64,000 bases of DNA from Scyliorhinus canicula. Lineage: Eukaryota. The notes beneath the pieces are model-generated. The model was not told where the DNA came from. It made no database searches and saw only the letters and a list, made by a program, of their open reading frames with translations. Position 1 is the first letter of the stretch. Every line of letters begins with the position of its first letter. The position numbers and the translations under genes are program-made. Positions 4,301 through 62,500 of the stretch are shown piece by piece. The DNA lies in contig NC_052160.1 of assembly GCF_902713615.1 (NCBI RefSeq), forward strand, positions 139,542,737 to 139,606,736. The letters run 5' to 3'.

Positions 4301-5217
4301 AAATTATGGCATAACATGTCCGGCTTTTGGCAAAATGTGCACAAAGTGCAAAGGGAAGAATCACTTCGCGAAACACTGTTCCTCAAATAAGAAAATTAAT
4401 GCAGGCAGTCGATTAACGTGATTGATGACACTAATTTAAGTGACACATTTTTCGTTGGCCTGGTGTGGGATGAAGACACAGTGAATGAAGCCATACAGAA
4501 TAAAATGCCACCCAGCAGTGCTGAAAGTGATATTGCAGCAGTAACAAGGGACAAATGGACCGTACCTTTGAGATAATCAATCAATGGCTAATTACTGTTA
4601 AATTACTGTTCAATTAGATACTTTGTAAAGGCAAACCTAATCAGTACAAGTGATATTAAGACCATGCAGCTAGAGCTGAGCATTCAAAATGAACCGGTCT
4701 TATTTACAGACTACAATGATGAGAAGATTGACACTTTGGGTATGTGCAAAATAGATGTGCAAGTAATAAACAAAGTGCACAAGCTGAAGTTGTCAATTGT
4801 TGCTGAAGGTCGTGAATAATTACGATATTGGTCTACCTATTCCCCAAAGCCCCCGTCCCACTCTCCACCCAGACACACACAAAACAGACACATGGTAAGC
4901 AGAGGGTAGGGGAAGAAATATATGAATGGGAATAGCAGGAAAAGGTTTGAGATGAATCTTCGCTGCTATAGTTGTGGCCTCTGTAGGCGTCGGTCGTCTC
5001 TGAATGTGACCCTCTGGGGAATGGATTTAAAGAAGAGATTCAAGTCGGTGCGATTCTATCTGTTGACCACCAGATGGAGCTTCCGTCTCCCTGAGATATT
5101 GCTAAATCAATAAAATAAATAAATAACCTTTTATTGCCATAAGTAGACTCACATTAACATTGCAATGCAGTTCCTGTGAAAAGTCCCCAGTCGCCACATT
5201 CCGGCGCCTGTTCGGGA

Positions 5218-8200
5218 TAGAAAATGGGTGACCAAAAGAAAGAGCAAGAGTAGGAAGGCAGTGCAGGTGTCCCCATGCGGTCATCTCCCTGCAAAACAGA
5301 TATACCGCTTTGGATACTGTTGAGGGAGATGGCTCACCAGGGGAAGGCAGCAGAGGCCAGGTTCATGGCACCGTGGCTGGCTCTGCTGCACAGCAGGGCA
5401 GGAAGAAAAATGGCAGGGCTATAGTGATAGGGGACTCGATCGTAAGGGGAATAGACAGGCGGTTCTGTGGACGCAATCGAGACTCCAGGATGGTATGTTG
5501 CCTCCCTGGTGCAAGGGTCAAGGATGTCTCGGAGCGGCTGCAGGACATTCTGGGGGGGGGGAGGGTGAACAGCCAGCTGTCGTGGTGCACATAGGCACCA
5601 ACGATATAGGTAAAAAACGGGATGAGGTCCTACAAGCGGAATTCAGGGAGTTAGGAGTTAAACTAAAAAGTAGGACTTCAAAGTTAGTAATCTCAGGATT
5701 GCTACCACTGCCACGAGCCAGTCAGAGTAGGAATGTCAGGATAGATAGGATGAATGCGTGGCTCGAGAGATGGTGCAAGAGGGAGGGATTCAAATTGGTG
5801 GGGCATTGGGACCGGTTCTGGGGGAGGTGGGACCAGTACAAACCGGACGGTCTGCACCTGGGCAGGACTGGAACCGATGTCCTAGGGGGGGTGTTTTCTA
5901 GAGCTGTTGGGGAGGGTTTAAACTAATGTGGCAGGGGGATGGGAACCGATGCAGGAAGTTGGAAGGTAGTAAAACAGGGACAGAAGCAAAAAGAAGTAAG
6001 GGGAAAAGTGCAAGGCAGAGAAGACATAGTCAAAAACCTAAAAGGGCGACAGTACAAGGTAGGGGAGCTCAGTGAATAGGCCCAGTAATAACAAAAGGAA
6101 TAAAACTGGAGATGTTAAGATTCAAAACAGAGGTAAAAAAACCAACATAAGTGTACTTTACCTGAATGCTCGTAGTATTCGGAATAAAGTAAATGAGTTG
6201 ATGGCACAAATCATCGTAAATGACTATGATTTAGTGGTCATTACTGAAACATGGTTAAAGGATGGTCACGACTGGGAGTTAAATATCCGAGGGTATCAAA
6301 CTATTCGGAAGGACAGAGTGGATGGTAAAGAAGGTGGTGTTGCTCTGTTATTTAAGGATGACATCCGGGCAATAGTAAGGGATGACATCGGTGCTATGGA
6401 GGATAAGGTTGAATCCATTTGGGTGGAAATCAGGAATAGTAAGGCGAAAAAGTCACTGATAGGAGTAGTCTATCGGCCACCAAATAGTAACGTTATGGTG
6501 GGGCAGGCAATAAACAAAGAAATAACTGATGCATGTAGAAATGGTACAGCAGTTATCATGGGGGGTTTTAATCTACATGTCGATTGGTTTAACCAGGTCG
6601 GTCAAGGCAACCTTGAGGAGGAGTTTATAGAATGTATCCGCGATAGTTTCCTAGAACAGTATGTAATGGAACCTATGAGGGAACAAGCGGTCCTAGATCT
6701 TGTCCTGTGTAATGAGACAGGATTGATTCATGATCTCACAGTTAGGGATCCTCTCGGAAGGAGCGATCACAATATGGTGGAATTTAAAATACAGATGGAG
6801 GGTGAGAAAGTAAAATCAAATACTAGTGTTTTGTGTTTAAACAAAGGAGATTACAAGGGGATGAGAGAAGAACTAGCTAAGGTAGACTGGAAGCTAAGAC
6901 TTTATGGTGGAACAGTTGAGGAACAGTGGAGAACCTTCCAAGCGATTTTTCACAGTGCTCAGCAAAGGTTTATACCAACAAAAAGGAAGGACGGAAGAAA
7001 GAGGGAAAATCGACCGTGGATATCTAAGGAAATAAGGGAGAGTATCAAATTGAAGGAAAAAGCATATCAAGTGGCAAAGATTGCTGGGAGATTAGAGGAC
7101 TGGGAAATCTTTAGGGGGCAACAGAAAGCTACTAAAAAAGCTATAAAGAAGAGTAAGATAGAGCATGAGAGTAAACTTGCTCAGAATATAAAAACAGACG
7201 GTAAAAGTTTTTACAAATATATAAAACAAAAACGAGTGGCTGAGGTAAATATTGGTCCTTTAGAGGATGAGATGGGAGTTTTAATAATGGGAAATGAGGA
7301 AATGGCTGAGGAACTGAACAGGTTTTTTGGGTCGGTCTTCACAGTGGAAGACACAAATAACATGCCAGCGACTGATAGAAATGAGGCTATGACAGGTGAG
7401 GACCTTGAGAGGATTGTTATCACTATGGAGGTAGTGATGGGCAAGCTAATGGGGCTAAAGGTAGACACGTCTCCTGGCCCTGATGGAATGCATCCCAGAG
7501 TGCAAAAAGAGATGGCTAGGGAAATTGCAGATGCACTAGTGATAATTTACCGAAATTCACTAGACTCTGGGGTGGTCCCAGTGGATTGGAAATTAGCAAA
7601 CGTGACATCACTGTTTAAAAAAGGAGGTAGGCAGAAAGCAGGAAATTATAGGCCAGTGAGCTTAACTTCGGTAGTAGGGAAGATGCTGGAATCTATCATC
7701 GAGGAAGAAATAGCGAGGCATCTGGATAGAAATTGTCCCATTGGGCAGACGCAGCATGGGTTCATAAAGGGCAGGTCATGCCTAACTAATTTAGTGGAAT
7801 TTTTTGAGGACATTACCAGTGCAGTAGATAATGGGGAGCCGATGGATGTGGTATATCTGGATTTCCAGGAAGCCTTTGACAAGGTGCCACACAAAAGGTT
7901 GCTGCATAAGATAAAGATGCATGGCATTACGGGTAAAGTAGTAGCATGGATAGAGGATTGGTTAATTAATAGAAAGCAAAGAGTGGGGATTAATGGGTGT
8001 TTCTCTGGTTGGCAATCAGTAGCTAGTGGTGTCCCTCAGGGATCCGTGTTGGGCCCACAATTGTTCACAATTTACACAGATGATTTGGAGTTGGGGACCA
8101 AGGGCAATGTGTCCAAGTTTGCAGATGACACTAAGATGAGTGGTAAAGCGAAAAGTGCAGAGGATACTGGAAGTCTGCAGAGGGATTTGGATAGGTTAAG

Positions 8201-9060
8201 TGAATGGGCTAGGGTCTGGCAGATGGAATACAATGTTGACAAATGTGAGGTTATCCATTTTGGTAGGAATAACAGCAAACAGGATTATTATTTAAACGAT
8301 AAAATATTAAAGCATGCCGCTGTGCAGAGAGACTTGGGTGTGCTAGTGCATGAGTCACAGAAGGTTGGTTTACAGGTGCAACAGGTGATTAAGAAGGCAA
8401 ATGGAATTTTGTCCTTCATTGCTAGAGGGATGGAGTTTAAGACTAGGGAGGTTATGTTGCAATTGTATAAGGTGTTAGTGAGGCCACACCTGGAGTATTG
8501 TGTTCAGTTTTGGTCTCCTTACTTGAGAAAGGACGTACTGGCACTGGAGGGTGTGCAGAGGAGATTCACTAGGTTAATCCCAGAGCTGAAGGGGTTGGAT
8601 TATGAGGAGAGGTTGTGTAGACTGGGACTGTACTCGTTGGAATTTAGAAGGATGAGGGGGGATCTTATAGAAACATTTAAAATTATGAAGGGTATAGATA
8701 AGATAGATGCGGGCAGGTTGCTTCCACTGGCGGGTGAAAGCAGAACTAGGGGTCATAGCCTCACAATAAGGGGAAGTAGATTTAGGACTGAGTTTAGGAG
8801 GAACTTCCTCACCCAAAGGGTTGTGAATCTATGGAATTCCTTGCCCAGTGAAGCAGTTGAGGCTCCTTCATTACATGTTTTTAAGGTAAAGATAGATAGT
8901 TTTTTGAAGAATAAAGGGATTCAGGGTTATGGTGTTCGGGCCGGAAAGTGGAGCTGAGTCCACAAACATCAGCCATGATCTCATTGAATGGCGGAGCAGG
9001 CTCGAGGGGCCAGATGGCCTATTCCTGCTCCTAGTTCTTATGTTCTTATTATGTTCTTAC
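5218..9060 (+). mobile_element. CR1-clade LINE, copy A (5' part deleted; ORF1 remnant, ORF2 APE+RT)
   Basis: ORF1 remnant has SGNH esterase motifs (GDSIV, HIGTND, DGLH); ORF2 at 6072-8957; 3' tail of (TTCTTATG)n-like repeats at ~9035-9060. Confidence 0.95.
6072..8957 (+). CDS. CR1 ORF2 endonuclease-reverse transcriptase (open frame, but disconnected from its ATG; EN motif GDFN changed to GGFN)
   Basis: 961-aa ORF with YLNARS, ITETW, SDH, SPGPDG, QHGF, AFDKV, GVPQGSVLGP, FADD, PHLEYC. The true ATG at 5926 is out of frame because of a 10-nt deletion relative to copy B. Confidence 0.85.
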   Translation: MNRPSNNKRNKTGDVKIQNRGKKTNISVLYLNARSIRNKVNELMAQIIVNDYDLVVITETWLKDGHDWELNIRGYQTIRKDRVDGKEGGVALLFKDDIRAIVRDDIGAMEDKVESIWVEIRNSKAKKSLIGVVYRPPNSNVMVGQAINKEITDACRNGTAVIMGGFNLHVDWFNQVGQGNLEEEFIECIRDSFLEQYVMEPMREQAVLDLVLCNETGLIHDLTVRDPLGRSDHNMVEFKIQMEGEKVKSNTSVLCLNKGDYKGMREELAKVDWKLRLYGGTVEEQWRTFQAIFHSAQQRFIPTKRKDGRKRENRPWISKEIRESIKLKEKAYQVAKIAGRLEDWEIFRGQQKATKKAIKKSKIEHESKLAQNIKTDGKSFYKYIKQKRVAEVNIGPLEDEMGVLIMGNEEMAEELNRFFGSVFTVEDTNNMPATDRNEAMTGEDLERIVITMEVVMGKLMGLKVDTSPGPDGMHPRVQKEMAREIADALVIIYRNSLDSGVVPVDWKLANVTSLFKKGGRQKAGNYRPVSLTSVVGKMLESIIEEEIARHLDRNCPIGQTQHGFIKGRSCLTNLVEFFEDITSAVDNGEPMDVVYLDFQEAFDKVPHKRLLHKIKMHGITGKVVAWIEDWLINRKQRVGINGCFSGWQSVASGVPQGSVLGPQLFTIYTDDLELGTKGNVSKFADDTKMSGKAKSAEDTGSLQRDLDRLSEWARVWQMEYNVDKCEVIHFGRNNSKQDYYLNDKILKHAAVQRDLGVLVHESQKVGLQVQQVIKKANGILSFIARGMEFKTREVMLQLYKVLVRPHLEYCVQFWSPYLRKDVLALEGVQRRFTRLIPELKGLDYEERLCRLGLYSLEFRRMRGDLIETFKIMKGIDKIDAGRLLPLAGESRTRGHSLTIRGSRFRTEFRRNFLTQRVVNLWNSLPSEAVEAPSLHVFKVKIDSFLKNKGIQGYGVRAGKWS

Positions 9061-10274
9061 ACCAGAAAGAGAACGTGCTCTATCTGAGTGCTGGGCCCGC
9101 ACCTTCTCTTTCTATGAAGCTGTTAGAACAAAGAGAGATCTTCTTTTAAAAAAAATGCAGTTAGAAAGAACAGCTGCTCAAAATAGGAAGTGTTTCAGAG
9201 TTAATGGACTCCTGAACAGCTATATAAATAAACACTGGTTTTTCAGAGGCTTTTCAAAGACAATGGCCCTTGAAATTGAATGTAAACAATATAGTTCAAA
9301 GCTTTTAGACTTCTATTGCTTGGAGCGAGGCTTGCAGAAAGGGCAATGAAATTGACTGCAGTAAAACCACTTCAATGGTTTCAACCACTTTAAAAGTAAG
9401 ACTTTTACCTTAATCTCACTGATCTTTGAACCTGGCATCCAGGGACACTGTTTAAAGGTGTTAAGGGTACAGGTGGGAAGATTTCACTTTCTTCTCACAG
9501 ATCTTTCTTATGGACAAGCTGAAAAACAGTTACAGGGATTAAAGGTTGCAGATGGGAAAACAAGCCAAATGACCCCATCCAGGGACAGACCCCGGCTTGA
9601 GCATTCCAGGCTACCCCAAGTCCATCCTGAACCATACCTCCTCTGAAGGACCCCCTCAGCACCCTGGAGGCAAGTGTTAGGAGGGCACCTCACCCCTTTC
9701 ACCCCTTCGATACCAAGGCGGCAGGTTGGCACTGCAAAGGGATGGGACCTGAGAGTGGGACTGAGGGCGGTGTGGAGTGGAGTGGGCTGAGGGGGGTACT
9801 GAGGGGGGGAGCTAAGGTGGGTGGGGGGGGCGAATGATGGGGGACTTGCCTGCGATTGTGGGGGGTAGGCCTTTCTAGCGAATCGGGGGTTTTCTGCAAC
9901 TTTATTCTGAGACCTGGGTGCCCTTTCAAAAAGCAGTCGGTGCTTGCTATTATTTCTGTCAGGAACCTCAGTCTGTCGTGTTGCCCTTTTCGCAGATGGA
10001 TTCATTAAACATCATTGATTTGTCGTGAACTTCAATCTGTTCCTCACTATTCATACTGTAAAGAATGAGAGATGATCTTATTCTAATGTATGAGATTCTG
10101 ATAGGGCGGACAGGGTAGATGGTGGGAGAATATTGCCCCTCCTGGAGCAATCCTGAATCACGAGGTGCAGTTTCAAAACATGGAATCCCCCATGTAAGAG
10201 AGATGAGGAAGAATTAGTTTCTCTCAGAGGGTTGGCCGCTCCAGAGGCTGTATAATTGAGTCCCATTGAGCCAG

Positions 10275-10597
10275 TGACATTCTGGCACAGTGATTAGCAC
10301 TGCTGCCTCCTGCACCAGGAATCCAGGTTCAATTCTGGCCTTGTCCGTGTGGAGTTTGCACATTCTCTCCATATCTGAGTGGACTTCCTCTGGGTGCCCC
10401 AGTTTCCTCCCACAATCCAAAGATCTCCAAGTTAGGTGAATCGGCCACGTTAAGATGCCCCTTGGTGTCCAAAGGTTAGGTGCAGTTACGGGGATAGGCG
10501 GAGGGGGTGGGCCTAAGGAGGGTGCTCTTTCAGAGGTCGCTACAGACTCAATGGGCCAAATGGCTTCATTCTGCACTGTAGGGATTCTATGATTCTC
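10275..10597 (+). mobile_element. HE1-like shark SINE (duplicate at ~35305-35628)
   Basis: tRNA-like head, V-domain core and CR1-like tail ending GATTCTATGATTCT. Confidence 0.75.
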
Positions 10598-11524
10598 TGA
10601 TTTTCAAGATGGAGTTAAAGAGATTTGTGATATACAAGGTTGTCAAGGGCTATGAGGGACGGAAAGGCAGGGCCATGGAGTTGAGCCCACAATCACGTCA
10701 GCCTTAATTGCATTGAATTGTGGAGCGGTCTTGATGGGCTAACTATCCAACTATTAGTTATGTTCTTACTTAACAACATCGCTGGCATTGAAAACAGATT
10801 ACACAGGCAGCTCAATGCAAAGAAGTTGTTGCTTTTTATTAAAATCTTTCAGATGTTTTAGTTCTGGTATTTTTGATACTCCTTTGATTCCATACACATC
10901 TGCCAATTTGTATTTTGCTTTCTGGACATTGATTTAAATGTGAATTATATTCCTACTTTTTACATCCTGCATTGCTGTCTGTGACAATTCTTCAATGTGA
11001 TTGGACGATCAGCCTACCTGTTGCCTGCCCTGTTTCTGGATGCCATACATCCCCTGGAGAAATTTGAAACTGACTTTGGGAAACAGGAAATTAGTGTTCT
11101 AGAACTGATCAAATCCACGTGGATAACTTTTATTAAGGACACAGACAAAACTGTCCCATTGTTACTGACCTGAAATTATGGGCTATCATTTCTCAGAACT
11201 TTGGGAAACATTGTTGGCCATTTTAGAATATGCGGAGCAGGGTCACTAAAGTTCAATCTGAAATGGACATAGATCCAACATCTGAAACAACGGGGACTTG
11301 TATTCGGATTATTCTGAGACATAAATAGACCAGAATGAGACTTCATCAGGCCATGTCCAAACTCCTGTAAATATTATTCAACAGTGACTTTGTATTTGAA
11401 ATGAGTTGATCCTCTCACAGGACAATTCAAATGTGAAATTAATTCAACCTCTACCCACACACAGATATCACAGGATAAAGAACATGAAACAGGAAAACTG
11501 GGAGTGCGAATTTCAAAATTATAT

Positions 11525-11530
11525 TTTATT
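11525..11530 (-). terminator. Polyadenylation signal, copy 1
   Basis: AATAAA on the minus strand ~540 nt after the stop codon; conserved in copy 2. Confidence 0.7.
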
Positions 11531-12068
11531 GAGCATTTTTAAGAACTATTATAAATGAAGTGATTGCAAAGGACAGAAAAGGCTGCTGTGTGATGTTAGG
11601 ATCACATTTACATCAAATCGGGTTTCACTGCAGAGTTCATCCACCTTCAGCAGAAATGTGTGTGTGTCTGGAGTGAATCATTGAACCAAGAATATATCAC
11701 AGCTGAAAGTCAGAATCAGGAAAGAGCTGAGTAAAAGGGTTTCACAATGAGAGAGGGAATAGAATTAGACCAAATTAACATTCTCATTTCCAATCCAGAA
11801 CCTGTTCTTAACCTGTTCCTTTAGAAGCCCACCCTGACAAGGCATTTCTTGAGTTCTTACTTCTATTTTCATTGCTTTTCAGCGTTCACTCGGTGCAATG
11901 TGCTGCTGTGCACAAACCACAGCCAAGTAGCCAATGGTCCGCCTTTGTTTATAGCCATTCTGGAGATGGTGACTTGCTCAATTATACTGTCCAGCTGCAC
12001 TGGGGAACTATGTGACGGCTCCAAATGCAAATCGGGGTGTGCTTTTAACGAGAACAGGAATAAAGAAC

Positions 12069-21949
<9,881 letters not shown>

Positions 21950-22013
21950 CTTGTCAGTTGGGTTGATTCAGAGACTCTTCAGAACCTAAAGTTTTGGGGT
22001 CTGAGCTGCAGCA

Positions 22014-22019
22014 TTTATA
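22014..22019 (-). promoter_or_regulatory. TATA box of pepsinogen copy 1
   Basis: GGCTATAAATGC on the minus strand, ~65 nt upstream of the ATG; conserved in copy 2. Confidence 0.8.
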
Positions 22020-23573
22020 GCCACTCTGACCAAACCATTCCATTGTCACGAGGACTCAGATACGATCAGTCAACGTGAGATGGAAGTTTTAATGTACTCA
22101 AGATTAGTTTATCTCAAGTGTAATCTCGTTAATTAAGGACAATCTTCAATTTACGTAGTCAGTAATTGAGTTCATTTGGATTGTAACAAATAATGTTAAG
22201 TGTTGTATGATTAAAACCTTGTGACTGATAAAACAATCATAAATATACCTGCAAATCGGGCAAAAAAACAATCATATCAGAATCACAAAATGTCAATGTC
22301 ACAAGTGCGCCAGAGAATAAGTTAACAGGTTTCACGCCAGTATAGCATTTAACTTTGGAGGTTGAAGCCTGTCCGATGGTGAATTTCCTGGAGGGTACTT
22401 TGTTCTTATACTTTAATTGAGGGTCTTAATTGACATCATCAGCTGCAAGAGTGATGCTCTGCTCACTTAGAAAAGTTATTTGACTCCAGAAAGATACATT
22501 TTCCATTTGATATTTCGAAATACACTCTTCTGCCTCGTGTGGATCTTGGTTTAGTGACAGAAATGTTACTGGTTTGGAAAGCCCCAGACCAGGACTTGAA
22601 TATGTGATCTATATGTGATAAGATAAATGACCATGTTAAAATATGGACCTTCCGCCTGTTCAAGTAAACTTTATGAGGTAAGACCAGAGGGATTTACCAA
22701 ATGGTCTACCCAATACTCACCCCCTCAACCCAACCCAGCAAACAAGCTTTTTCAAATTGTTCTCGGGGTGTGAGTGTTTCTGGCCGGTCTATCATTTATC
22801 CCTTATTGCCCATGATAACCGATCACCTTCTCTGCTGTGGGATGATGCAACTGAATGGTTTGCTTGGCCATTTCAGAGGGTAACTGGATGTCGGCAACAT
22901 TGCCTGGGTCCGGAGTCACAGGTAAGCCAGACACGATAAGGGCGGCAGATTCCTGTCCCTGAAGGTCATTAGTGATCCCGGTGGACTTTTAACAATGATT
23001 ATTACTAAAACAAGCAATTATTCCAGATTTATCAATCAATCAAATTGCAATTCACCAGCTTTGATGGTAGGATTTGAACTCTTCTGGACCATTAACTTCA
23101 GTGTCTGGATGGCAACATCACCCAACCGAGCACCCCGATCCAAATTATCCCATCCCATTGTTACTGTGGGATTTTTCTGTCTGAAAGCTGCCTGCTGCAG
23201 ATCTGTACAAACCCAGTTGTGCTCATGCTGCAGTGATAACTGATTTAATCCGTGGTGATGTAAGTTATTCCAGTCATGGAAACAGGGAAGGTTCCTGCTG
23301 CTGTTCCCATATCCGCTGGACACTGTGGATTGTTATATCTCTGGACATTGCGAAAGGACAAGATTGTAAACTGCTGTACCCGCCATTGTATCCAACAACC
23401 CACCCGCACGTTGAGAAAAGGTCACTGGCCTGAATTCAGCAGTTGCCAACAGAAGAAAAACTCCACATTTGCTGATAATCTTTAGAAATTAAAGTCACAT
23501 TCAAGAACTTTTGGCCTGGGAACTGGACCTTCTTTATAAAATGTTGTGACAGGTACTAGTACCTTATAAACTT

Positions 23574-24038
23574 TGTCACAATACCCTGGGCTAGTGCGTG
23601 GACAATTACAGCCCCTCTTAATCGGGAGTCGCAACACAGGTGAAATTAGATATATTAAATATCCAAGGTCCTTAATTAAAGAGAAAAACTACAGTCACCA
23701 GGTTTGCAGCTTTGGCACACAAGTAACCTTTTATTCTGCACTGTATTATAATTAATTAAAATATAATTAAACTGACAAAAAACGTAACTGAATATCTACT
23801 ACCCCTTTCCCAAATCCCCCTTCCTAACTCACCCCACTATCTGGACACACACACACAGACAAACAAACTAGAGGGGGAAGAATGGGGTAAAGGGAAATTA
23901 AATATTATTAACAAAATAACGATTAGGATCTTTAGTTCACTGGGATTACGTCCAGTCAATGTCTTTCTGAAGTTCACGCTTTTGTTTTGGTACTTCTTCT
24001 TTCTAGCCTTGTGATGGTTTCCTCCGGCAAATTTATCT
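23574..24038. mobile_element. Same LTR-like element upstream of copy 1, truncated at the duplication junction
   Basis: Starts TGTCACAATACCCTGGG; similarity to its relatives stops abruptly at TATCT (24038). Confidence 0.55.
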
Positions 24039-24624
24039 GTTGACCACCAGATGGAGCTTCCGTCTCCCTGAGATATTGCTAAATCAATAAAATAAATAAA
24101 TAACCTTTTATTGCCATAAGTAGACTCACATTAACATTGCAATGAAGTTCCTGTGAAAAGTCCCCAGTCGCCACATTCCGGCGCCTGTTCGGGTACACAG
24201 AGGGAGAATTCAGAATTCTCAGCTGGTACGGGAATTGAACCCGTTGCTTTGCTCTGCATCACAAAGCAGCTGTCTAGCCCACTGAGCTAAACCGTGCAAG
24301 GTAACTACAGCCCTTGGAGGGATGAGCGACATGCCCATACAGTGCCCTGGCAGTGCCCCCTGGTGCAGGTTTGCTGTAAGGTTGACACGGCTGGTGGAGC
24401 CACCACTCCATCCGTTGTGGGGGCTGTGGGCCGTTAGGTATCAATGCTGATCAGGGCGTCCCGACTTTCACCTCTATAAGGCCCTGCCCCACCAGAGTGA
24501 CAGTGTGAACTTCACCCCCATCTTTTATTCATTCACGAAGGCTCAAAACTGGAGAGTTACACGCCAGTTTTCACCCTGATCCTGACACTTTTCCAAATTC
24601 TGGTGAGATTCCGCCCGGAGTGTG

Positions 24625-29903: not shown

Positions 29904-30628
29904 GCTTTTCCAGGAGACACATCCGGAGTGAGACTCATCTAGAGTGGGATTGCAACTTGGTAATTTGGTGCAGTGAGGTAAATCAGGAAAGGTAAGTGGA
30001 AAATCTAATTCTGCTGTTTTTCAGTTAAAAGTGCAGTGTGTAGCTTAGTATCTGATTGGTTGAAGCTGCCCCCACCCTAATTGCTGAGAGGCAGTTATCT
30101 GTCAATCACCTGAGGCCTGTTTAGGGGCACATTGTATTCTTCTCTTTAAAGTTTAGGTATTTTTTGAGTCATCGAATAGCTGAGGTCTGTATAAAAGACA
30201 GACAGAGATGCACTCAGTAAGCTAGCGCTTTTCCAGGAGACACATCCGGAGTGAGATTCATCTAGAGTGGGATTGCAACTTGGTAATTTGGTGCAGTGAG
30301 GTAAATCAGGAAAGGTAAGTGGAAAATCTAATTCTGTTGTTTTTCAGTTAAAAGTGCAGTGTATAGCTTAGTGTCTGATTGGTTGAAGATGCCCCCACCC
30401 TAATTGCTGAGAGGCAGTTATCTGTCAATCACCTGAGGCCTGTTTAGGGGCACATTGTATTCTTCTCTTTGAAGTTTAGGTATTTTTTGAGTCATCGATT
30501 AGCTGAGGTCTGTATAAAAGACAGACAGAGAGCGCACTCAGTAAGCTAGCGCTTTTCCAGGAGACACATCCGGAGTGAGACTCACCTAGAGTGGGATTGC
30601 AACTTGGTAATTTGGTGCAGTGAGGTAA
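29904..30628 (+). repeat. Tandem ~323-bp monomers at the CR1 5' end (2 full + 1 partial)
   Basis: GCTTTTCCAGGAGACACATCCGGAG starts at 29904, 30227 and 30551. Confidence 0.95.
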
Positions 30629-30783
30629 TTCGGCGCAGAGTGTGAGGAGGTTCTTTTTCAGAGGTGCTTTTTAACCCTGGAAAGTGACTGGTAAGTAGTT
30701 TTTCTTTTCATTCTTTTCATTGTCTAATTTATTTATTTTTATTTTGAAATTGTTATTGTATAAGTTTACCTAAGGTTTAAGAC

Positions 30784-31713
30784 ATGGCAGGAGATCCCAG
30801 ACCCGTGTCATGCTCCTCGTGTGCGATGTGGGAGCTCAGGGACATGTTCACTGTCCCTGGCTCTTTCACATGCAAGAAGTGTGTTCAGTTGCAGCTCTTG
30901 TTAGACCGCTTGACGACTCTGGAGCTGCGGATGGACTCACTTTGGAGCATCCACGATGCTGAGGAGGTCGTGAATAGCACGTTTAGCGAGTTGGTCACAC
31001 CGCAGGTGAAAATTAATGAGGAAGATAGAAAATGGGTGACCAAAAGAAAGAGCACGAGTAGGAAGGCAGTGCAGGTGTCCCCTGCGGTGATCTCCCTGCA
31101 AAACAGATATACCGCTTTGGATACTGTTGAGGGAGATGGCTCACCAGGGGAAGGCAGCAGAGGCCAGGTTCATGGCACCGTGGCTGGCTCTGCTGCACAG
31201 CAGGGCAGGAAGAAAAATGGCAGGGCTATAGTGATAGGGGACTCGATCGTAAGGGGAATAGACAGGCGGTTCTGTGGACGCAATCGAGACTCCAGGATGG
31301 TATGTTGCCTCCCTGGTGCAAGGGTCAAGGATGTCTTGGAGCGGCTGCAGGACATTCTGGGGGGGGGGGGGGGGGGGGAGGGTGAACAGCCAGCTGTCGT
31401 GGTGCAAATAAGCACCAACGATATAGGTAAAAAACGGGATGAGGTCCTACAAGCGGAATTCAGGGAGTTAGGAGTTAAACTAAAAAGTAGGACCTCAAAG
31501 GTAGTAATCCCAGGATTGCTACCAGTGCCACGAGCTAGTCAGAGTAGGAATGTCAGGATAGATAGGATGAACGCGTGGCTCGAGAGATGGTGCAAGAGGG
31601 AGGGATTCAAATTCCTGGGGCATTGGGACCGGTTCTGGGGGAGGTGGGACCAGTACAAACCGGACGGTCTGCACCTGGGCAGGACTGGAACCGATGTCCT
31701 ATGTGTTTTCTAG
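30784..31713 (+). CDS. CR1 ORF1 (Cys zinc finger/leucine zipper + SGNH esterase), C-terminal frameshift
   Basis: CSSC...CKKC followed by a heptad-like segment; GDSIV, PGA, STND, DGLH. A small deletion near 31700 shifts the last codons. Confidence 0.85.
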   Translation: MAGDPRPVSCSSCAMWELRDMFTVPGSFTCKKCVQLQLLLDRLTTLELRMDSLWSIHDAEEVVNSTFSELVTPQVKINEEDRKWVTKRKSTSRKAVQVSPAVISLQNRYTALDTVEGDGSPGEGSRGQVHGTVAGSAAQQGRKKNGRAIVIGDSIVRGIDRRFCGRNRDSRMVCCLPGARVKDVLERLQDILGGGGGGEGEQPAVVVQISTNDIGKKRDEVLQAEFRELGVKLKSRTSKVVIPGLLPVPRASQSRNVRIDRMNAWLERWCKREGFKFLGHWDRFWGRWDQYKPDGLHLGRTGTDVLCVF

Positions 31714-31737: not shown

Positions 31738-33947
31738 ATGTGGCAGGGGGATGGGAACCAATGCAGGAAGTTGGAAGGTAGTAAAACAGGGACAGAAGAA
31801 AAAGGAAGTAAGGGGAAAAGTGTAAGGCAGAGAAGACATAGTCAAAAATCTAAAAGGGCGACAGTACAAGGTACAGTGAGTGAAGGGAGCTCAGTGAATA
31901 GGCTCAGTAATACTACAAGGAATAAAACTGGAGATGTTAAGATTCAAAACAGAGGTAAAAAAAACAACATAAGTGTACTTTACCTGAATGCTCGTAGTAT
32001 TCGGAATAAAGTAAATGAGTTGATGGCACAAATCATCGTTAATGACTATGATTTAGTGGCCATTACTGAAACATGGTTAAAGGATGGTCACGACTGGGAG
32101 TTAAATAGCCGAGGGTATCAAACTATTCGGAAGGACAGAGTGGATGGTAAGGGAGGTGGTGTTGCTCTGTTATTTAAGGATGACATCCGGGCAATATTAA
32201 GGGATGACATCGGTGCTGTGGAGGATAAGGTTGAATCCATTTGGGTGGAAATCAGGAATAGTAAGGCGAAAAAGTCACTGATAGGAGTAGTCTATCGGCC
32301 ACCAAATAGTAACGTTATGGTGGGGCAGGCAATAAACAAAGAAATAACTGATGCATGTAGAAATGGTACAGCAGTTATCATGGGGGATTTTAATCTACAT
32401 GTCGATTGGTTTAACCAAGTCGGTCAAGGCAACCTTGAGGAGGAGTTTATAGAATGTATCCGCGATAGTTTCCTAGAACAGTATGTAATGGAACCTACGA
32501 GGGAGCAAGCGGTCCTAGATCTTGTCCTATGTAATGAGACAGGATTGATTCATGATCTCATAGTTAGGGATCCTCTCGGAAGGAGCGATCACAATATGGT
32601 GGAATTTAAAATACAGATGGAGGGTGAGAAAGTAAACTCAAATACTAGTGTTTTGTGTTTAAACAAAGGCGATTACAAGGGGATGAGAGAAGAACTAGCT
32701 AAGGTAGACTGGGAGCTAAGACTTTATGGTGGAACAGTTGAGGAACAGTGGAGAACCTTCCAAACGATTTTTCACAGTGCTCAGCAAAGGTTTATACCAA
32801 CAAAAAGGAAGGACGGTAGAAAGAGGGAAAATCGACCGTGGATATCTAAGGAAATAAGGGAGAGTATCAAATTGAAGGAAAAAGCATATAAAGTGGCAAA
32901 GATTGCTGGGAGATTAGAGGACTGGGAAATCTTTAGGGGGCAACAGAAAGCTACTAAAAAAGCTATAAAGAAGAGTAAGATAGAGTATGAGAGTAAACTT
33001 GCTCAGAATATAAAAACAGACAGTAAAAGTTTTTACAAATATATAAAACAAAAAAGAGTGGCTAAGGTAAATATTGGTCCTTTAGAGGATGAGATGGGAG
33101 TTTTAATAATGGGAAATGAGGAAATGGCTGAGGAACTGAACAGGTTTTTTGGGTCGGACTTCACAGTGGAAGACACAAATAACATGCCAGCGACTGATAG
33201 AAATGAGGCTATGACAGGTGAGGACCTTGAGAGGATTGTTATCACTAAGGAGGTAGTGATGGGCAAGCTAATGGGGCTAAAGGTAGACAAGTCTCCTGGC
33301 CCTGATGGAATGCATCCCAGAGTGCTAAAAGAGATGGCTAGGGAAATTGCAGATGCACTAGTGATAATTTACCGAAATTCACTATACTCTGGGGTGGTCC
33401 CGGTGGATTGGAAATTAGCAAACGTGACACCACTGTTTAAAAAAGGAGGTAGGCAGAAAGCAGGAAATTACCTCCACACCTGGAGTATTGTGTTCAGTTT
33501 TGGTCTCCTTACTTGAGAAAGGACGTACTGGCACTGGAGGGTGTGCAGAGGAGATTCACTAGGCTAATTCCAGAGCTGAAGGGGTTGGATTATGAGGAGA
33601 GGTTGAGTAAACTGGGACTGTACTCGTTGGAATTTAGAAGGATGAGGGGGGATCTTATAGAAACATTTACAATTATGAAGGGAATAGATAAGATAGATGC
33701 GGGCAGGTTGTTTCCACTGGCGGGTGAAAGCAGAACTAGGGGACATAGCCTCAAAATAAGGGGAAGTACATTTAGGACTGAGTTTAGGAGGAACTTCTTT
33801 ACCCAAAGGGTTGTGAATCTATGGAATTCCTTGCCCAGTGAAGCAGTTGAGGCTCCTTCATTACATGTTTTTAAGGTAAAGATAGATAGTTTTTTGAAGA
33901 ATAAAGGGATTAAGGGTTATGGTGTTCGGGCCGGAAAGTGGAGCTGA
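31738..33947 (+). pseudogene. CR1 ORF2 copy B with RT core deleted
   Basis: ORFs 31738-33516 and 33513-33947; the junction GGAAATTA-CCT-CCACACC joins the pre-RT region to the C-terminal domain out of frame. Confidence 0.9.
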
Positions 33948-36553
33948 GTCCACAAAATATCAGCCATGATCTCATTGAATGGCGGAGCAGGCTCGATGGG
34001 CCAGATGGCCTATTCCTGCTCTTAGTTCTTATGTTCTTATGTTGTTATTATGTTCTTACACCAGAAAGAGAACGTGCTCTATTTGAGTGCTGGGCCCGCA
34101 CCTTCTCTTTCTATGAAGCTCTTAGAACAAAGAGAGAGCTTCTTTAAATAAAATGCAGTTAGAAAGAACAGCTGCTCAAAATAGGCAGTGTTTCAGAGTT
34201 AATGGACTCCTGAACAGCGATATAAATAAACAATGGTAAACCTTCCTTTGAAATTGCCTGGACCTGCCAGTCCAGAGGCTTTTCAAAGACAATGGCCCTT
34301 GAAATTGAATGTAAACAATATAGTTCAAAGCTTTTAGACTTCTATTGCTTGGAGCGAGGCTTGCAGAAAGGGCAATGAAATTGACTGCAGTAAAACCACT
34401 TCAATGGTTTCAACCACTTTAAAAGTAAGACTTTTACCTTAATCTCACTGATCTTTGAACCTGGCATTCAGGCACACTGTTTAAAGGTGTTAAGGGTACA
34501 GGTGGGAAGATTTCACTTTCTTCTCACATATCTTTCTTATTGACAAGCTGAAAAACAGTTACAGGGATTAAAGGTTGCAGATGGGAAAACAAGCCAAATG
34601 ACCCCATCCAGGGACAGACCCCGGCTTGAGCATTCCAGGCTACCCCAAGTCCATCCTGAACCATACCTCCTCTGAAGGACCCCCTCAGCACCCTGGAGGC
34701 AAGTGTTAGGAGGGCACCTCACCCCTTTCACCCCTTCGATACCAAGGCGGCAGGTTGGCACTGCAAAGGGATGGGATCTGAGAGTGGGACTGAGGGTGGT
34801 GTGGAGTGGAGTGGGCTGAGGGGGGTACTGAGGGGGGGAGCTAAGGTGGGTGGGGGGGGCGAATGACGGGGGACTTGCCTGCGATTGTGAGGGGTAGGCC
34901 TTTCTAGCGAATCGGAGGTTTTCTGCAACTTTATTCTGAGATCTGGGTGCCCTTTCAAAAAGCAGTCGGTGCTTGCTATTATTTCTGTCAGGAACCTCAG
35001 TCTGTCGTGTTGCCCTTTTCGCTGATGGATTCATTAAACATCATTGATTTGTCGTGAACTTCAATCTGTTCCTCACTATTCAAACTGTAAAGAATGAGAG
35101 ATGATCTTATTCTAATGTATGAGATTCTGATAGGGCGGACAGGGTAGATGGTGGGAGAATATTGCCCCTCCTGGAGCAATCCTGAACCACGAGGTGCAGT
35201 TTCAAAACATGGAATCCCCCATTTAAGAGAGAGATGAGGAAGAATTAGTTTCTCTCAGAGGGTTGGCCGCTCCAGAGGCTGTATAATTGAGTCCCATTGA
35301 GCCAGTGGCATTCTGGCACAGTGATTAGCACTGCTGCCTCCAGCACCAGGAATCCAGGTTCAATTCTGGCCTTGTCCGTGTGGAGTTTGCACATTCTCTC
35401 CATATCTGAGTGGACTTCCTCTGGGTGCTCCAGTTTCCTCCCACAATCCAAAGATCTCCAAGTTAGGTGAATCGGCCACGTTAAGATGCCCCTTGGTGTC
35501 CAAAGGTTAGGTGTAGTTACGGGGATAGGCGGAGGGGGTGGGCCTAAGGAGGGTGCTCTTTCAGAGGTCGGTACAGACTCAATGGGCCAAATGGCTTCAT
35601 TCTGCACTGTAGGGATTCTATGATTCTCTGATTTTCAAGATGGAGTTAAAGAGATTTGTGATATACAAGGTTGTCAAGGGCTATGAGAGACGGAAAGACA
35701 GGGCCATGGAGTTGAGCCCACAATCACGTCAGCCTTAATTGCATTGAATTGTGGAGCGGTCTTGATGGGCTAACTATCCAACTATTAGTTATATTCTTAC
35801 TTAACAACATCGCTGGCATTGAAAACAGATTACACAGGCAGCTCAATGCAAAGAAGTTGTTGCTTTTTATTAAAATCTTTCAGATGTTTTAGTTCTGGTA
35901 TTTTTGATACTCCTTTGATTCCATACACATCTGCCAATTTGTATTTTGCTTTCTGGACATTGATTTAAATGTGAATTATATTTCCTACTTTTTACATCCT
36001 GCATTGCTGTCTGTGACAATTCTTCAATCAGATTGGATGATCAGGTTGCCTGTTGCCTGCCCTGTTTCTGGATGCCATACATCCCCTGTAGAAAGTTGAA
36101 ACTGACTTTGGGAAACAGGAAATTAGTGTTCTAGAACTGATCAAATCCACGTGAATAACTTTTATTAAGGACACAGACAAAACTGTCCCATTGTTACTGA
36201 CCTGAAATTATGGGCTATTGTTTCTCAGAACCTTGGGAAACGTTAGCCATTTTAGAATATGCGGAGCAGGGTCACTAAAGTTCAATCTGAAATGGACATA
36301 GATCCAACATCTGAAACAACGGGGACTTGTATTTGGATTATTCTGAGACATAAATAGACCAGAATGAGACTTCATCAGGCCATGTCCAAACCCCTGTAAA
36401 TATTATTCAACAGTGACTTTGTATTTGAAATGAGTTGATCCTCTCACAGGACAATTCAAATGTAAAATTAATTCAACCTCTACCCACACACAGATATCAC
36501 AGGATAAAGAACATGAAACAGGAAAACTGGGAGTGCGAATTTCATAATTATAT

Positions 36554-59537: not shown

Positions 59538-62500
59538 GGGTGGGATTCTCCGTCTGCTGACGCCAGGTTGGGAAACGTGCTTGTGTGGAGAGTTGGTACT
59601 GACGGCAAAACCGTGGTGGGCACCGGTTTCACATGAAATCACAATTCTCCGGTGCCTCGACAGCAGCGTCAATGCGCTCCACTCTGCAGAACAGTAAACG
59701 CCGTTGGCGTATCATTAGCGGACCTGACCCGGTATTCTCCGGGGCCTCCGCGATTCTCCATCTCGACTGGGGGGGAATTCACGCCGGCGAAGTTCTCTTG
59801 TGCTTTTAAGAGTCGAGAAACAGGCACCATGGCTGATGAGGGAGAGAGAGGACATGGAGAGGGCTCCGGGTTCTGACACTGGTCAGGCTGGGGTTAGGGG
59901 GCCAGGGTTGGTGGGGGGGGGGGGGGGGGGGGGGGGGAACCTGTGCAGTGTTGGCCTGGGTGGCACACATGGTTGGCACCACCTCCTGCTCCTGCACGCG
60001 ATTGGACTCCTCCGCCTGCACCTGCAGCTGCTGGATCCTGCGACATCCCCTCCTGTGGTCCCTGGCTCTGTGACTGCATCTCTGCTATGGATGGGACTGT
60101 CCAATCCAGAAGCTCGAGACCCGTCAGGATGGCAGCTAGTCCCTGGGGTCGGCCTGCCCTCCAATCATCCGCCCCCCAGGAGTTCCTGCCTCCATCTGTT
60201 GTACCAGGTCTGCTGCGTGGTGCACACCAGATAGTGTCCCAGGAGCATCTTCACTGAAGCGCCCAACCGAGGCGAGCATCTCTGGATTGGTGGAGGGTGT
60301 TGGAGAAGCTGTGATGGGAAATCGATGTCATCCCCGGGCTCGAGCTGTGGGGTAGACTGGATTTCAGGTTGAGGGCTTCCATCTGTGTCGGTATCGACCT
60401 CGTCGCTGCCCGGCACCCGGGGCTCTGGCTGTGGCTGGGGGTGGGGTTCACCAGAAGGACCCCACCTATCTCCAGGCGGTCCTGCAAGACACAAGACAGA
60501 ACGCATGGTTAGGCTGCGGGATTGGGGGGGGGGGGGGGGGTTGTGGGTCTGAGTGCAGCATGGGTGAGGGGGGATGCAGATGAGAAGGTGGTGTGAGGGT
60601 GAGGGTGGAGTGGGGGTGGTGTGGGGTGAGGGTGGAGTGGGAGTGGTGTGGGGTGAGGGTGGAGTGGGGGTGGTGTGAGGTGAGGGTGGAGTGGGGGTGG
60701 TGTGGGGTGAGGGTGGAGTGGGGGTGGTGTGGGGTGAGGGTGGTGTGGGGGTGGTGTGGGGTGAGGGTGGAGTGGGGGTGGTGTGAGTTGAGGGTGGAGT
60801 GGGGGTGGTGTGGGGTGAGGGTGGAGTGGGGGTGGTGTGGGGTGAGGGTGGTGTGGGGGTGGTGTGGGGTGAGGGTGGAGTGGGGGTGGTGTGGGGTGAG
60901 GGTGGAGTGGGGGTGGTGTGGGGTGAGGGTGGAGTGGGGGTGGTGTGGGGTGAGGGTGGAGTGGGGGTGGTGTGGGGTGAGGGTGGAGTGGGGGTGGTGT
61001 GGGGTGAGGATGGTGTGGGGGTGGTGTGGGGTGAGGGTGGAGTGGGGGTGGTGTGGGGTGAGGGTGGAGTGGGGGTGGTGTGGGGTGAGGGTGGTGTGGG
61101 GGTGGTGTGGGGGTGAGGGTGGTGTGGGGGTGGTGTGGGGTAAGGATGGAGTGGGGGTGGTGTGGGGATGTGGGTGGTGTGGGGTGAGGGTGGTGTGGGG
61201 GTGGTGTGGGGGTGGTGTGGGGGTGGTGTGGGTGTGGGGATGTGGGTGGTGTGAGGGAGATGTGGGTGGTGTGAGGGTGGTGTGGGGGTGTGGGTGCTGT
61301 GGGTGTGGTGTGGGGTTGAGGGGGTGAGGGTGGTGTGGGTGTGGGTATGGTATGGGGGTGAGGGTGGTGTGGGGGTGAGGGTGGTGTGGGGTGGAGTGGG
61401 GGTGAGGGTGGTGTGGGTGTGGTGTGGGGTGAGGGTGGTGTGGAGGTGGTGTGGGGGTGAGGGTGGTGTGGGGGTGATTTGGGAGTGAGGGTGGTGTGGG
61501 GGTGAGGGTGGTGTGAGGGTGGTATGGGGACGTGGGTGGTGTGGGGTGGTGTGGGGGTGAAGGTGGTGTGGGTGTGGTGTGGGGGTGAGGGTGGTGTGGA
61601 GGTGGTGTGGGGGTGAGGGTGGTGTGGGGGTGATTTGGGAGTGAGGGTGGTGTGGGTGTGGTGTGGGGGTGAGGGTGGTGTGGAGGTGGTGTGGGGTGAG
61701 TGGATGGCTCCTGGGGATGCTGGCTTTTAAAGCAGACCAAGCAGGCCAGCAGCACGGTTCGATTCCCGTACCAGCCTCCCCGGACAGGCGCCGGAATGTG
61801 GCGACTAGGGGCTTTTCACAGTAACTTCATTGAAGCCTACTCGTGACAATAAGCGATTTTCATTTCATTTCATTTCATTTCACCTAGACATAACAATAGA
61901 GCAAGAAAGGCAAAGCACGTTGAGGATCACTGAGGGCACCAGGGAAGGGGTGAGTCGGTGGAGGAGAATAGGTAGGGGGTGCGGTGGGGTGAAGGGGTGG
62001 TGGGGACTGTGGGGCGGTACCATCAGGAGAGTGGGGCATTGTTGGACATTAATAATCCTTCACCACAACCAGTATGACTCCACTTTCACTTTCTTCTGCA
62101 ATGGGAACTGACCTCTGAACCCTTTGCCCATCTCTCCAGTCATCTCGCCCTCTCCAGGCACACCGCGTACATGTGATGGGTGTGAGCGAGTACTCAGCAG
62201 GCAGGCAGGGGTCAGATTAAGGCACAGATTGAGGAGCACCAGAGCTCAGCTCTCTGCGGCTTATCATCAACCCCCTGTCCTCGACTGTGACCCGCTGACA
62301 GTGCCAAAACTCTGTCCCAGCACCCTGGAGTGATGTGACACAGATCCTGGGAGGATTGGAAAAAGGGGGGGCGGGGAGTGGGGAAGATAGCGATGAAGGA
62401 CCATGCCATTTCCTATGTGAAGCGGGTGAGAATGAGGGTGTATCAGGCCCTCTGGGCTTGCCCCACCCCCTCCCCCCCCCCCTGCTGCAGCCTGTCCTGC

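What the first reader, a model, noticed from the sequence alone, without database searches (positions are those of the whole stretch)
29904..30660. CR1 LINE with tandem TATA/CCAAT promoter monomers: a possible self-renewing upstream promoter
Seen: the element begins exactly at a monomer start. Each ~323-bp monomer has an inverted CCAAT (CTGATTGGT) and ends with TATAAAAG (30190, ~30513), then TCAGT (Inr-like), then the pyrimidine-rich GCTTTTCC that opens the next monomer, ~26-38 nt after the TATA. Known: LINEs usually use internal promoters; monomer arrays occur in rodent L1, and in Drosophila HeT-A an upstream copy drives the next one. Inference: a TATA promoter in monomer n would start transcription at monomer n+1, so each round of transposition loses a monomer and the array must be rebuilt. 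I do not know this arrangement as a described CR1 feature.
Basis: partly seen in the sequence, partly recalled or inferred. Interest (0 to 1): 0.72.

Follow-up and report, generated by a model that had tools for sequence, protein, structure and literature searches.

The report
Shark CR1 LINE with TATA-bearing head repeats
A dead copy of a shark CR1 jumping gene starts with two and a quarter 323-bp repeats, each ending in a TATA box aimed at the start of the next repeat. The same "repeat, TATA, repeat" head occurs in related elements of a zebra shark, a skate and an unidentified sample, so it is most likely an inherited promoter design, though no RNA data were available to prove it.

Summary
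A 323-bp unit is repeated 2.2 times (97% alike) at 29904-30631. It forms the 5' end of a CR1-type LINE: esterase ORF1, EN-RT ORF2 and an 8-nt-repeat tail. Each unit carries a Y-box/CCAAT and a TATAAAAG 37-38 nt before the next unit.

No second independent copy of this family was reachable, because the other copy in the window is the same insertion carried along by a segmental duplication.

Related esterase-CR1 elements show the same layout: first N nt, a TATA segment, then the same N nt again.
- Zebra shark: 217-bp unit.
- Little skate: 79-bp unit, 1.5 copies in one element and 2.5 in another.
- One ENA contig of unknown species: 82-bp unit.

In each, the element's 5' end lies 30-37 nt after the internal TATA. 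Shuffle P is 0.001-0.015 per lineage.

How arrays are replenished is unknown. Repeated 5' subunits in CR1-group elements have been mentioned once in print, without promoter analysis. This scan has already noted many CR1 monomer heads on other DNA of this genome. Verdict: a new variant of the monomeric LINE promoter, of moderate to high interest.

The parts
29904..30226 (+). Monomer 1 (323 nt), first base of the element
   Evidence: TRF; the repeat finder; alignment
30227..30550 (+). Monomer 2 (324 nt), 9 differences from monomer 1
30551..30631 (+). Partial monomer 3 (about 80 nt, the 'R' part); departs from the unit after a GTGAGGTAA 5'-splice-site-like string
30632..30783 (+). Non-repeated leader ('tether') up to the ORF1 ATG. 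Holds GGTAAGT at 30690 followed by a pyrimidine-rich run; the part next to the ATG is homologous to L006
30052..30065 (+). Y-box / inverted CCAAT (CTGATTGGTTGAAG) of monomer 1. The second copy is at 30375-30388. The identical 14-mer sits in the 5'UTR of L001
   Evidence: 100% 15-16 nt match to L001 4216-4231
30190..30197 (+). TATAAAAG of monomer 1, 37 nt before the monomer 2 start
30513..30520 (+). TATAAAAG of monomer 2, 38 nt before the partial monomer 3 start
30784..31713 (+). ORF1, 309 aa, SGNH/GDSL esterase type; open
   Evidence: (PF13472 E=6e-12)
31738..33947 (+). ORF2 remnant: endonuclease domain, then loss of about 835 nt holding the RT domain (junction 33470/33474), then the C-terminal part in another frame
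34020..34059 (+). 3' tail of short 8-nt repeats (ATGTTCTT-like), no poly-A; end of element
5216..9059 (+). Sister copy of the same insertion, carried by a segmental duplication. It lacks the first 1120 nt (no 5'UTR) and keeps a 961-aa ORF2 with the RT domain

Best explanation
The 323-bp units are the inherited, repeated 5'UTR promoter of a CR1-type LINE, comparable to mouse L1 monomers plus tether.

Each unit has three parts:
- a start region R of about 80 nt;
- a middle part with a consensus NF-Y Y-box;
- a TATA box at its end.

RNA polymerase II recruited at the TATA of unit n starts some 30-37 nt downstream, at the first bases of unit n+1. The first base of R is therefore the 5' end of the RNA and of every full-length new copy.

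A copy that keeps at least one TATA unit can still be transcribed after landing anywhere in the genome. Each TATA-driven transcript, however, lacks the unit that drove it. Unit number should therefore fall unless arrays in source copies are re-expanded.

Shown here:
- the anatomy;
- its recurrence in four other elements of three other families;
- coincidence of 5' termini with the post-TATA position;
- variable unit number in a skate family.

Inferred, not shown:
- that TATA and Y-box bind TBP and NF-Y;
- that transcription starts there;
- how units are regained.
For: Anatomy of this element.

Identity as a CR1-type LINE:
- Esterase ORF1 and EN domain.
- RT domain in the sister copy.
- 8-nt repeat tail.

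Recurrence of 'R - TATA segment - R' in other elements:
- L007, Stegostoma tigrinum: 217-nt unit, 1.8 copies, 97% alike. The array starts where a foreign LINE ORF2 is interrupted. TATAAATA lies 35 nt before the second R.
- L001, ENA contig: 49-nt R twice at 98%, TATAAAG 33 nt before the second R.
- L012 and L013, Leucoraja erinacea: 79-nt unit, 1.5 and 2.5 copies. Their 5' termini lie 1 nt apart, 30-31 nt after the TATA.

Statistics: shuffles give P = 0.015, 0.0044, 0.0012 and 0.002 for a TATAWA starting 27-40 nt before the next unit.

Conservation: the L001 and skate 5'UTRs share 79% of columns over about 290 nt, covering the TATA segment, R and twin CTGATTGG boxes. Their ORF1 proteins are only 52% identical. 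That points to selection on the head.

Independent terminus: L006 is a relative with no TATA unit. It begins at the position homologous to this monomer's start, joined to a 28S fragment. This fits that position being the RNA 5' end.
Against:
- There is no second independent copy of this 323-bp family. The other copy in the window is the same insertion and lacks the 5'UTR.
- The two monomers differ by 2.8%, no more than the segmental-duplication copies differ (3.3-5.6%). The unit duplication in this copy could therefore be as young as, or younger than, the insertion.
- The TATA-to-terminus distance here (37-38 nt) is longer than the usual vertebrate spacing of about 30 nt. The TCAGT initiator-like string lies 11 nt upstream of the terminus, not at it.
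- A look-alike TATAAAAAGACAG upstream of the skate copy L002 turned out to be flanking DNA. Motif coincidences do occur.
- In L013 the two units are only 89% alike and their TATA is degenerate.
Confidence: 0.62

Rival explanations
1. Local accident: after this one copy inserted, a 323-bp piece of its 5'UTR was tandemly duplicated by replication slippage or unequal exchange. Under this view the repeat has no role in the family's life cycle.
For: Only one copy with a 5'UTR is visible in the window. Monomer divergence (9/323) is no greater than the divergence of the segmental-duplication copies (96.7% and 94.4%), so a post-insertion origin is allowed by the dates. Notes of this scan report on-the-spot growth of another CR1 head array in this genome (s1-253613; not checked by me).
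Against: A random local duplication would not be expected to begin at the element's first base, nor to place a TATA 37 nt before each unit start (P about 0.015). The same layout recurs in three other families. L006 shows the same terminus without any repeat.
Confidence: 0.13
2. Ordinary internal promoter with enhancer-like repeats. Transcription starts at the first base of the element, driven by downstream elements such as the Y-boxes and an initiator at R, as in most LINEs. The repeats only add binding sites. The TATA boxes reinforce internal starts that yield protein-coding but not self-propagating RNAs. No unit is lost per cycle and nothing needs rebuilding.
For: In L001 and the skate family the twin CTGATTGG boxes lie downstream of every R and outside the repeat, like the internal elements of other LINE promoters. 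Most copies seen have only 1-2 TATA units, which is hard to sustain if each cycle strictly loses one. L006, with no TATA unit, still has an intact-looking head. Internal promoters are the rule in non-LTR elements (PMC1636488 introduction).
Against: It does not explain why a TATA sits at a fixed 30-37 nt from each internal R start in unrelated unit sequences. It also does not explain why the TATA segment is conserved between L001 and the skate family.
Confidence: 0.2
3. Assembly artefact: the repeat is a mis-assembly of reads from several copies of the family.
For: None specific. Repeats are error-prone in assemblies, and a 24-nt G run lies nearby in ORF1.
Against: The units differ at 9 scattered positions and stay in perfect register with a clean partial third unit. 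Independent assemblies of other species show the same kind of structure.
Confidence: 0.02

Closest known systems
Mouse and rat L1 monomeric 5'UTR (A, Tf and Gf monomers plus tether)
   Same: Tandem promoter units at the 5' end of a LINE, followed by a non-repeated tether and ORF1. A few units per copy: mouse subfamilies average 2.3-3.7 (PMC11602158). Tandem duplications also occur in L1 5'UTRs of horse, elephant, hyrax and opossum (PMC5381506).
   Different: A different LINE clade: CR1 with esterase ORF1, not L1. The units here are CpG-poor (2-3 CpG, 42% GC). They are built on a canonical TATA box plus a Y-box, rather than the CpG-rich YY1-dependent monomers of mouse L1. The array starts exactly at a unit start.
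Repeating 5' subunits of CR1-group elements (Ancient Persistence and Newfound Diversity of CR1-Group Retrotransposons Across Vertebrates, PMC13343379)
   Same: The legend of its Fig. 4 states that some elements carry 1-5 species-specific subunits of 100-500 bp near the 5'UTR. This is the same kind of structure, in the same group of elements.
   Different: That paper reports it for ORF1-less elements and does not analyse it: the text holds no occurrence of 'promoter', 'monomer' or 'tandem'. Here the element has ORF1. A TATA-to-unit-start relation and cross-species conservation are shown here.
Drosophila HeT-A 'promoting in tandem' and TART direct repeats
   Same: A non-LTR element whose promoter lies upstream of the start site in a preceding repeat, giving an LTR-like logic (PMC5537684). 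For TART, a reverse-transcriptase template jump between direct repeats was proposed to restore 5' sequence upstream of the start site (PMC1636488).
   Different: In HeT-A the promoter is in the 3' end of a separate upstream element and depends on head-to-tail telomeric arrays. In TART the repeats are at the two ends of the element. Here the repeats are adjacent, inside one 5'UTR, and the element is dispersed in the genome.
LTR retrotransposon / retroviral U3-R arrangement
   Same: A TATA-bearing segment lies directly upstream of a repeated R that begins at the RNA start. The repeated R could support strand transfer.
   Different: There are no LTRs, no primer-binding site and no integrase. Replication is by target-primed reverse transcription. 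The resemblance is in layout only.

Membership tests
CR1-group LINE (non-LTR retrotransposon) | ORF2 with apurinic-type endonuclease followed by reverse transcriptase | tested here: met
   PF03372 in ORF2 of this copy. PF03372 plus PF00078 in the 961-aa ORF2 of the sister copy. This copy has lost the RT part.
CR1-group LINE (non-LTR retrotransposon) | Esterase (SGNH/GDSL) type ORF1, the only identifiable ORF1 type reported in CR1 and L2 lineages (PMC13343379) | tested here: met
   PF13472 E=6e-12. 90 homologues, nearly all from sharks, rays and amphibians.
CR1-group LINE (non-LTR retrotransposon) | 3' end of short direct repeats instead of poly-A | tested here: met
   8-nt repeats at 34020-34058, then flank.
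CR1-group LINE (non-LTR retrotransposon) | RT phylogeny placing it in canonical CR1 rather than L2 | not tested
   No tree was built. 'CR1-type' rests on ORF1, the tail and relatives.
Monomeric LINE promoter (mouse L1 type) | Two or more tandem units at the 5' end, then a non-repeated tether, then ORF1 | tested here: met
   2.2 units of 323 nt, about 150-nt leader, ORF1.
Monomeric LINE promoter (mouse L1 type) | Unit number varies among copies of one family | tested here: inconclusive
   No second copy of this family was reachable. The feature is met in a related skate family: L012 has 1.5 units, L013 has 2.5 and L002 is truncated.
Monomeric LINE promoter (mouse L1 type) | Units have promoter activity and hold transcription starts | not testable with these tools
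Only indirect evidence from 5' termini is available.
TATA-box core promoter | TATAWAAR box with a start about 25-35 nt downstream at a pyrimidine-purine step | tested here: inconclusive
   A perfect TATAAAAG is present. The terminus G is preceded by C, 37-38 nt downstream; relatives give 30-35 nt. No RNA data.
HeT-A type promoter (3' end of upstream element drives the next) | Promoter located in the 3' UTR of a separate upstream element in a head-to-tail array | tested here: not met
   The promoter-like units lie in the element's own 5'UTR. The upstream flank is unrelated DNA.

The most novel reading that the evidence does not exclude
Elasmobranch esterase-CR1 LINEs carry an LTR-like, self-regenerating promoter. 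The head is terminally redundant (R - TATA segment - R). Transcription from the TATA drops one unit. When reverse transcriptase reaches the RNA 5' end (R), the nascent cDNA re-anneals to an internal R and recopies the TATA segment plus R, adding units back. This would be a strand-transfer step inside a non-LTR element. The design would have been kept since before sharks and skates split, because the TATA segment and R of L001 and of the skate family are still alignable.
Probability: 0.15. Interest if true: 0.85.

Novelty: new variant of a known kind. Interest (0 to 1): 0.6.

Why it matters
LINEs are textbook examples of elements that must carry an internal promoter, because anything upstream of the start site is lost on copying. 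A canonical upstream-type TATA promoter held inside a short terminal redundancy is a different answer to that problem. It recurs in CR1 families of a zebra shark, a skate and an unidentified relative.

CR1-group elements make up 22-34% of elasmobranch genomes (PMC13343379). Their promoter design therefore bears on how these very large genomes were built. It also bears on the regulatory motifs (TATA, NF-Y sites, splice-donor-like strings) that each insertion scatters near genes.

The design gives a simple, testable system for how monomer arrays are lost and regained, a question still open for mouse L1.

Tried and rejected
No read laying was possible.

2. ORF1 search for same-family copies: the best hit is only 75% identical (Pristiophorus japonicus). 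The family itself is not in the protein collection.

3. The search for related loci on metagenome contigs with an ORF1 alignment: only two distant, uninformative loci.

4. Pattern scan of genome contigs for the Y-box-to-TATA module: no match.

5. Several contig look-ups gave no DNA or no record. L005 is degenerate with no clear head. The Logan contigs L008-L011 all start 112-126 nt before the ATG and were uninformative.

6. I first took the TATAAAAAGACAG upstream of GCTTTTACC in skate locus L002 as a conserved homologue of the window's TATA. Alignment with two sister copies showed that L002 is 5'-truncated and that this TATA is flanking DNA. The idea was rejected.

7. I first took the second CR1 in the window as an independent copy for dating. 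Its 3' flank is homologous for more than 15 kb, so it is the same insertion. The idea was rejected.

8. I considered that GTAAGCTAGCGC before the unit start is a decayed ancestral TATA. The multiple alignment instead aligns the present TATA with those of the relatives, so the idea was dropped.

Full report
**What is there.** Tandem Repeats Finder reports one strong array at 29904-30628: period 323, 2.2 copies, 97% matches. The repeat finder carries the third, partial copy to 30631.
- Monomer 1 (29904-30226) and monomer 2 (30227-30550) differ at nine positions, one of them an indel.
- Each unit holds CTGATTGGTTGAAG (30052, 30375). From general knowledge this is a perfect match to the NF-Y Y-box CTGATTGGYYRR.
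- Each unit also holds TATAAAAG (30190, 30513) and TCAGT (30214, 30538).
- The next unit opens with GCTTTTCC at 30227 and 30551, 37 and 38 nt after the first T of the TATA.
- The units are CpG-poor: 2-3 CpG and 42% G+C.
- About 150 nt of non-repeated leader follow, then ORF1 at 30784.

**The element.**
- ORF1 (30784-31713, 309 aa) is an SGNH/GDSL esterase (PF13472).
- ORF2 (from 31738) has the endonuclease domain.
- The 3' end is a run of 8-nt repeats at 34020-34058 without poly-A.
- These are the marks of the CR1 group (PMC13343379).
- The closest ORF1 in 5.8 billion proteins is only 75% identical (Pristiophorus japonicus). All near relatives are from sharks and rays.
- This copy is dead. About 835 nt holding the RT domain are missing at 33470/33474.

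**The second copy in the window is not independent.** A copy at 5216-9059 is 96.7% identical. Its 3' flank is also homologous, and the match runs on to about 23.7 kb versus 51.3 kb. The CR1 therefore inserted once and was then carried along by a segmental duplication whose edge lies inside ORF1.
- That copy keeps a 961-aa ORF2 with RVT_1, so the RT loss here happened after insertion.
- It lacks the first 1120 nt, so the window gives no second look at the head.
- The 2.8% difference between the two monomers is not larger than the 3.3-5.6% between the duplicated segments. The two units were therefore near-identical when the element inserted, or were duplicated later.

**Evidence from other DNA.** I fetched DNA upstream of related ORF1 genes instead.

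1. *L007, Stegostoma tigrinum.* A 217-nt unit, 1.8 copies, 97% alike, lies directly before ORF1. The array begins where another LINE's ORF2 is interrupted. TATAAATA sits 35 nt before the second copy. The second copy departs from the first exactly at the TATA.
2. *L001, ENA contig, ORF1 73% identical to ours.* A 49-nt stretch occurs twice at 98%, separated by a segment with TATAAAG 33 nt before the second copy. The identical 14-mer Y-box of our monomer lies downstream.
3. *Leucoraja erinacea, three copies of one family*.
   - L012 has 1.5 units of 79 nt and L013 has 2.5.
   - Their 5' ends lie 1 nt apart, 30-31 nt after the TATA of the internal unit, at a pyrimidine-purine step.
   - L002 is truncated inside the last R. 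The TATA upstream of it is flank, a warning about coincidences.
4. *L006, JGI contig, ORF1 77% identical.* The Rfam match to 28S rRNA ends at 740. The CR1 5'UTR, alignable with our monomer start, begins within 5 nt of the homologous position. It has no repeat and no TATA.

**Is the TATA placement chance?** Shuffling each unit gives the probability of a TATAWA starting 27-40 nt before the next unit:

| Locus | P |
|---|---|
| window | 0.015 |
| L007 | 0.0044 |
| L001 | 0.0012 |
| L012 | 0.002 |

Counting L001 and the skate family as one lineage, the product is of the order of 1e-7. The L001 and skate heads share 79% of columns over about 290 nt, covering the TATA segment, R and twin Y-boxes. 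Their ORF1 proteins are only 52% identical. The head therefore looks more constrained than the protein.

**Reading.** The common design is R, then a TATA-bearing segment, then R again, then the leader. The first base of R is the 5' end of inserted copies. The simplest account is that the start of R is the RNA start, set by the TATA of the preceding unit.
- In this window's family the unit has grown to include the Y-box region. Each TATA therefore has an NF-Y site 137 nt upstream.
- A TATA-driven transcript lacks the unit that drove it. Copies with 2.2 units imply sources with more, or a way to add units.
- Candidates for adding units are unequal exchange or slippage in source copies, or a reverse-transcriptase jump from the terminal R to an internal R. 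A jump of this kind was proposed for the TART direct repeats (PMC1636488). Nothing here decides between them.
- In L013 the two units are only 89% alike. That speaks for arrays being inherited through RNA rather than being remade at every cycle.
- Alternatively, the first R may be used through downstream elements, as in ordinary LINE internal promoters. Then nothing is lost per cycle.

**Weak points for this locus.**
- The distance of 37-38 nt is long for a TATA-directed start.
- The initiator-like TCAGT lies 11 nt upstream of the terminus.
- The 5' end is defined only by the end of repeat homology plus the L006 comparison.

**Comparison with what is known.**
- Monomer arrays are classic in mouse and rat L1. 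Tandem duplications occur in several other mammalian L1 5'UTRs (PMC5381506; PMC11602158).
- HeT-A uses a promoter in the preceding element (PMC5537684).
- For CR1-group elements, one 2026 paper mentions repeating 100-500 bp subunits near the 5'UTR, in a figure legend and without analysis (PMC13343379).
- My other full-text searches found no description of a TATA-aimed repeat in CR1.
- This scan has already logged about 22 notes on CR1 heads made of monomers on other DNA of this genome. Most concern a 131-bp family, and a few carry the same 'TATA aimed at a repeat of the first bases' reading. I did not check those loci.

Noticed in passing
window 5216-23714 versus 31024-51283: Large direct segmental duplication (83-97% identity in blocks), with one edge inside the CR1 ORF1. 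Also, 5057-5216 matches 24034-24193 at 99.4%, and 23700-24041 matches 64000-63659 inverted at 99.1%. This looks like a tandemly duplicated gene region.
   Followed up: partly
L006 1-1015 (JGI 3300026616, Ga0262470_11016): A diverged 28S rRNA fragment (Rfam LSU model positions up to 3003) is joined head-on to the 5' end of a CR1. It is either a template-switch chimera made at the RNA 5' end or an insertion into an rDNA pseudogene.
   Followed up: partly
window 29991, 30314, 30690; also L006 about 920-1000, L007 4623: Consensus 5' splice-site strings (GGTAAGT/GGTGAGT) recur in CR1 5'UTRs (P = 0.007 by shuffling here). In the window and in L006 one of them is followed by a pyrimidine tract and an AG just before the ORF1 ATG, like a retained mini-intron. 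In L001, L007 and the skate the TATA directly overlaps a GTGAGT. A scan note (s1-236538) reports mini-exon/mini-intron monomers in another family of this genome.
   Followed up: partly
window 31359-31382: A 24-nt G run inside ORF1, in frame (a glycine stretch), where relatives have no such run. It may be a homopolymer expansion or a sequencing problem.
   Followed up: no
L001 4299-4387; L002 4693-4871; L012 2667-2902; L013 2750-2867: Short 16-19-nt tandem repeats of variable number lie between the Y-boxes and ORF1 in the 5'UTRs of related CR1 families. This is a second, smaller repeat layer in the head.
   Followed up: no
window 60587-61696: G-rich 27-nt minisatellite, 41 copies, 86% matches.
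   Followed up: no
protein hits P0009, P0027, P0067, P0084: CR1 ORF1 sequences appear in public records under other names: a 'Pseudomonas aeruginosa' SGNH hydrolase on a 4-kb contig (likely contamination), and isoforms named 40S ribosomal protein S24, transmembrane protein 204 and ABHD14A-like in rays (likely gene models that swallowed a CR1).
   Followed up: no
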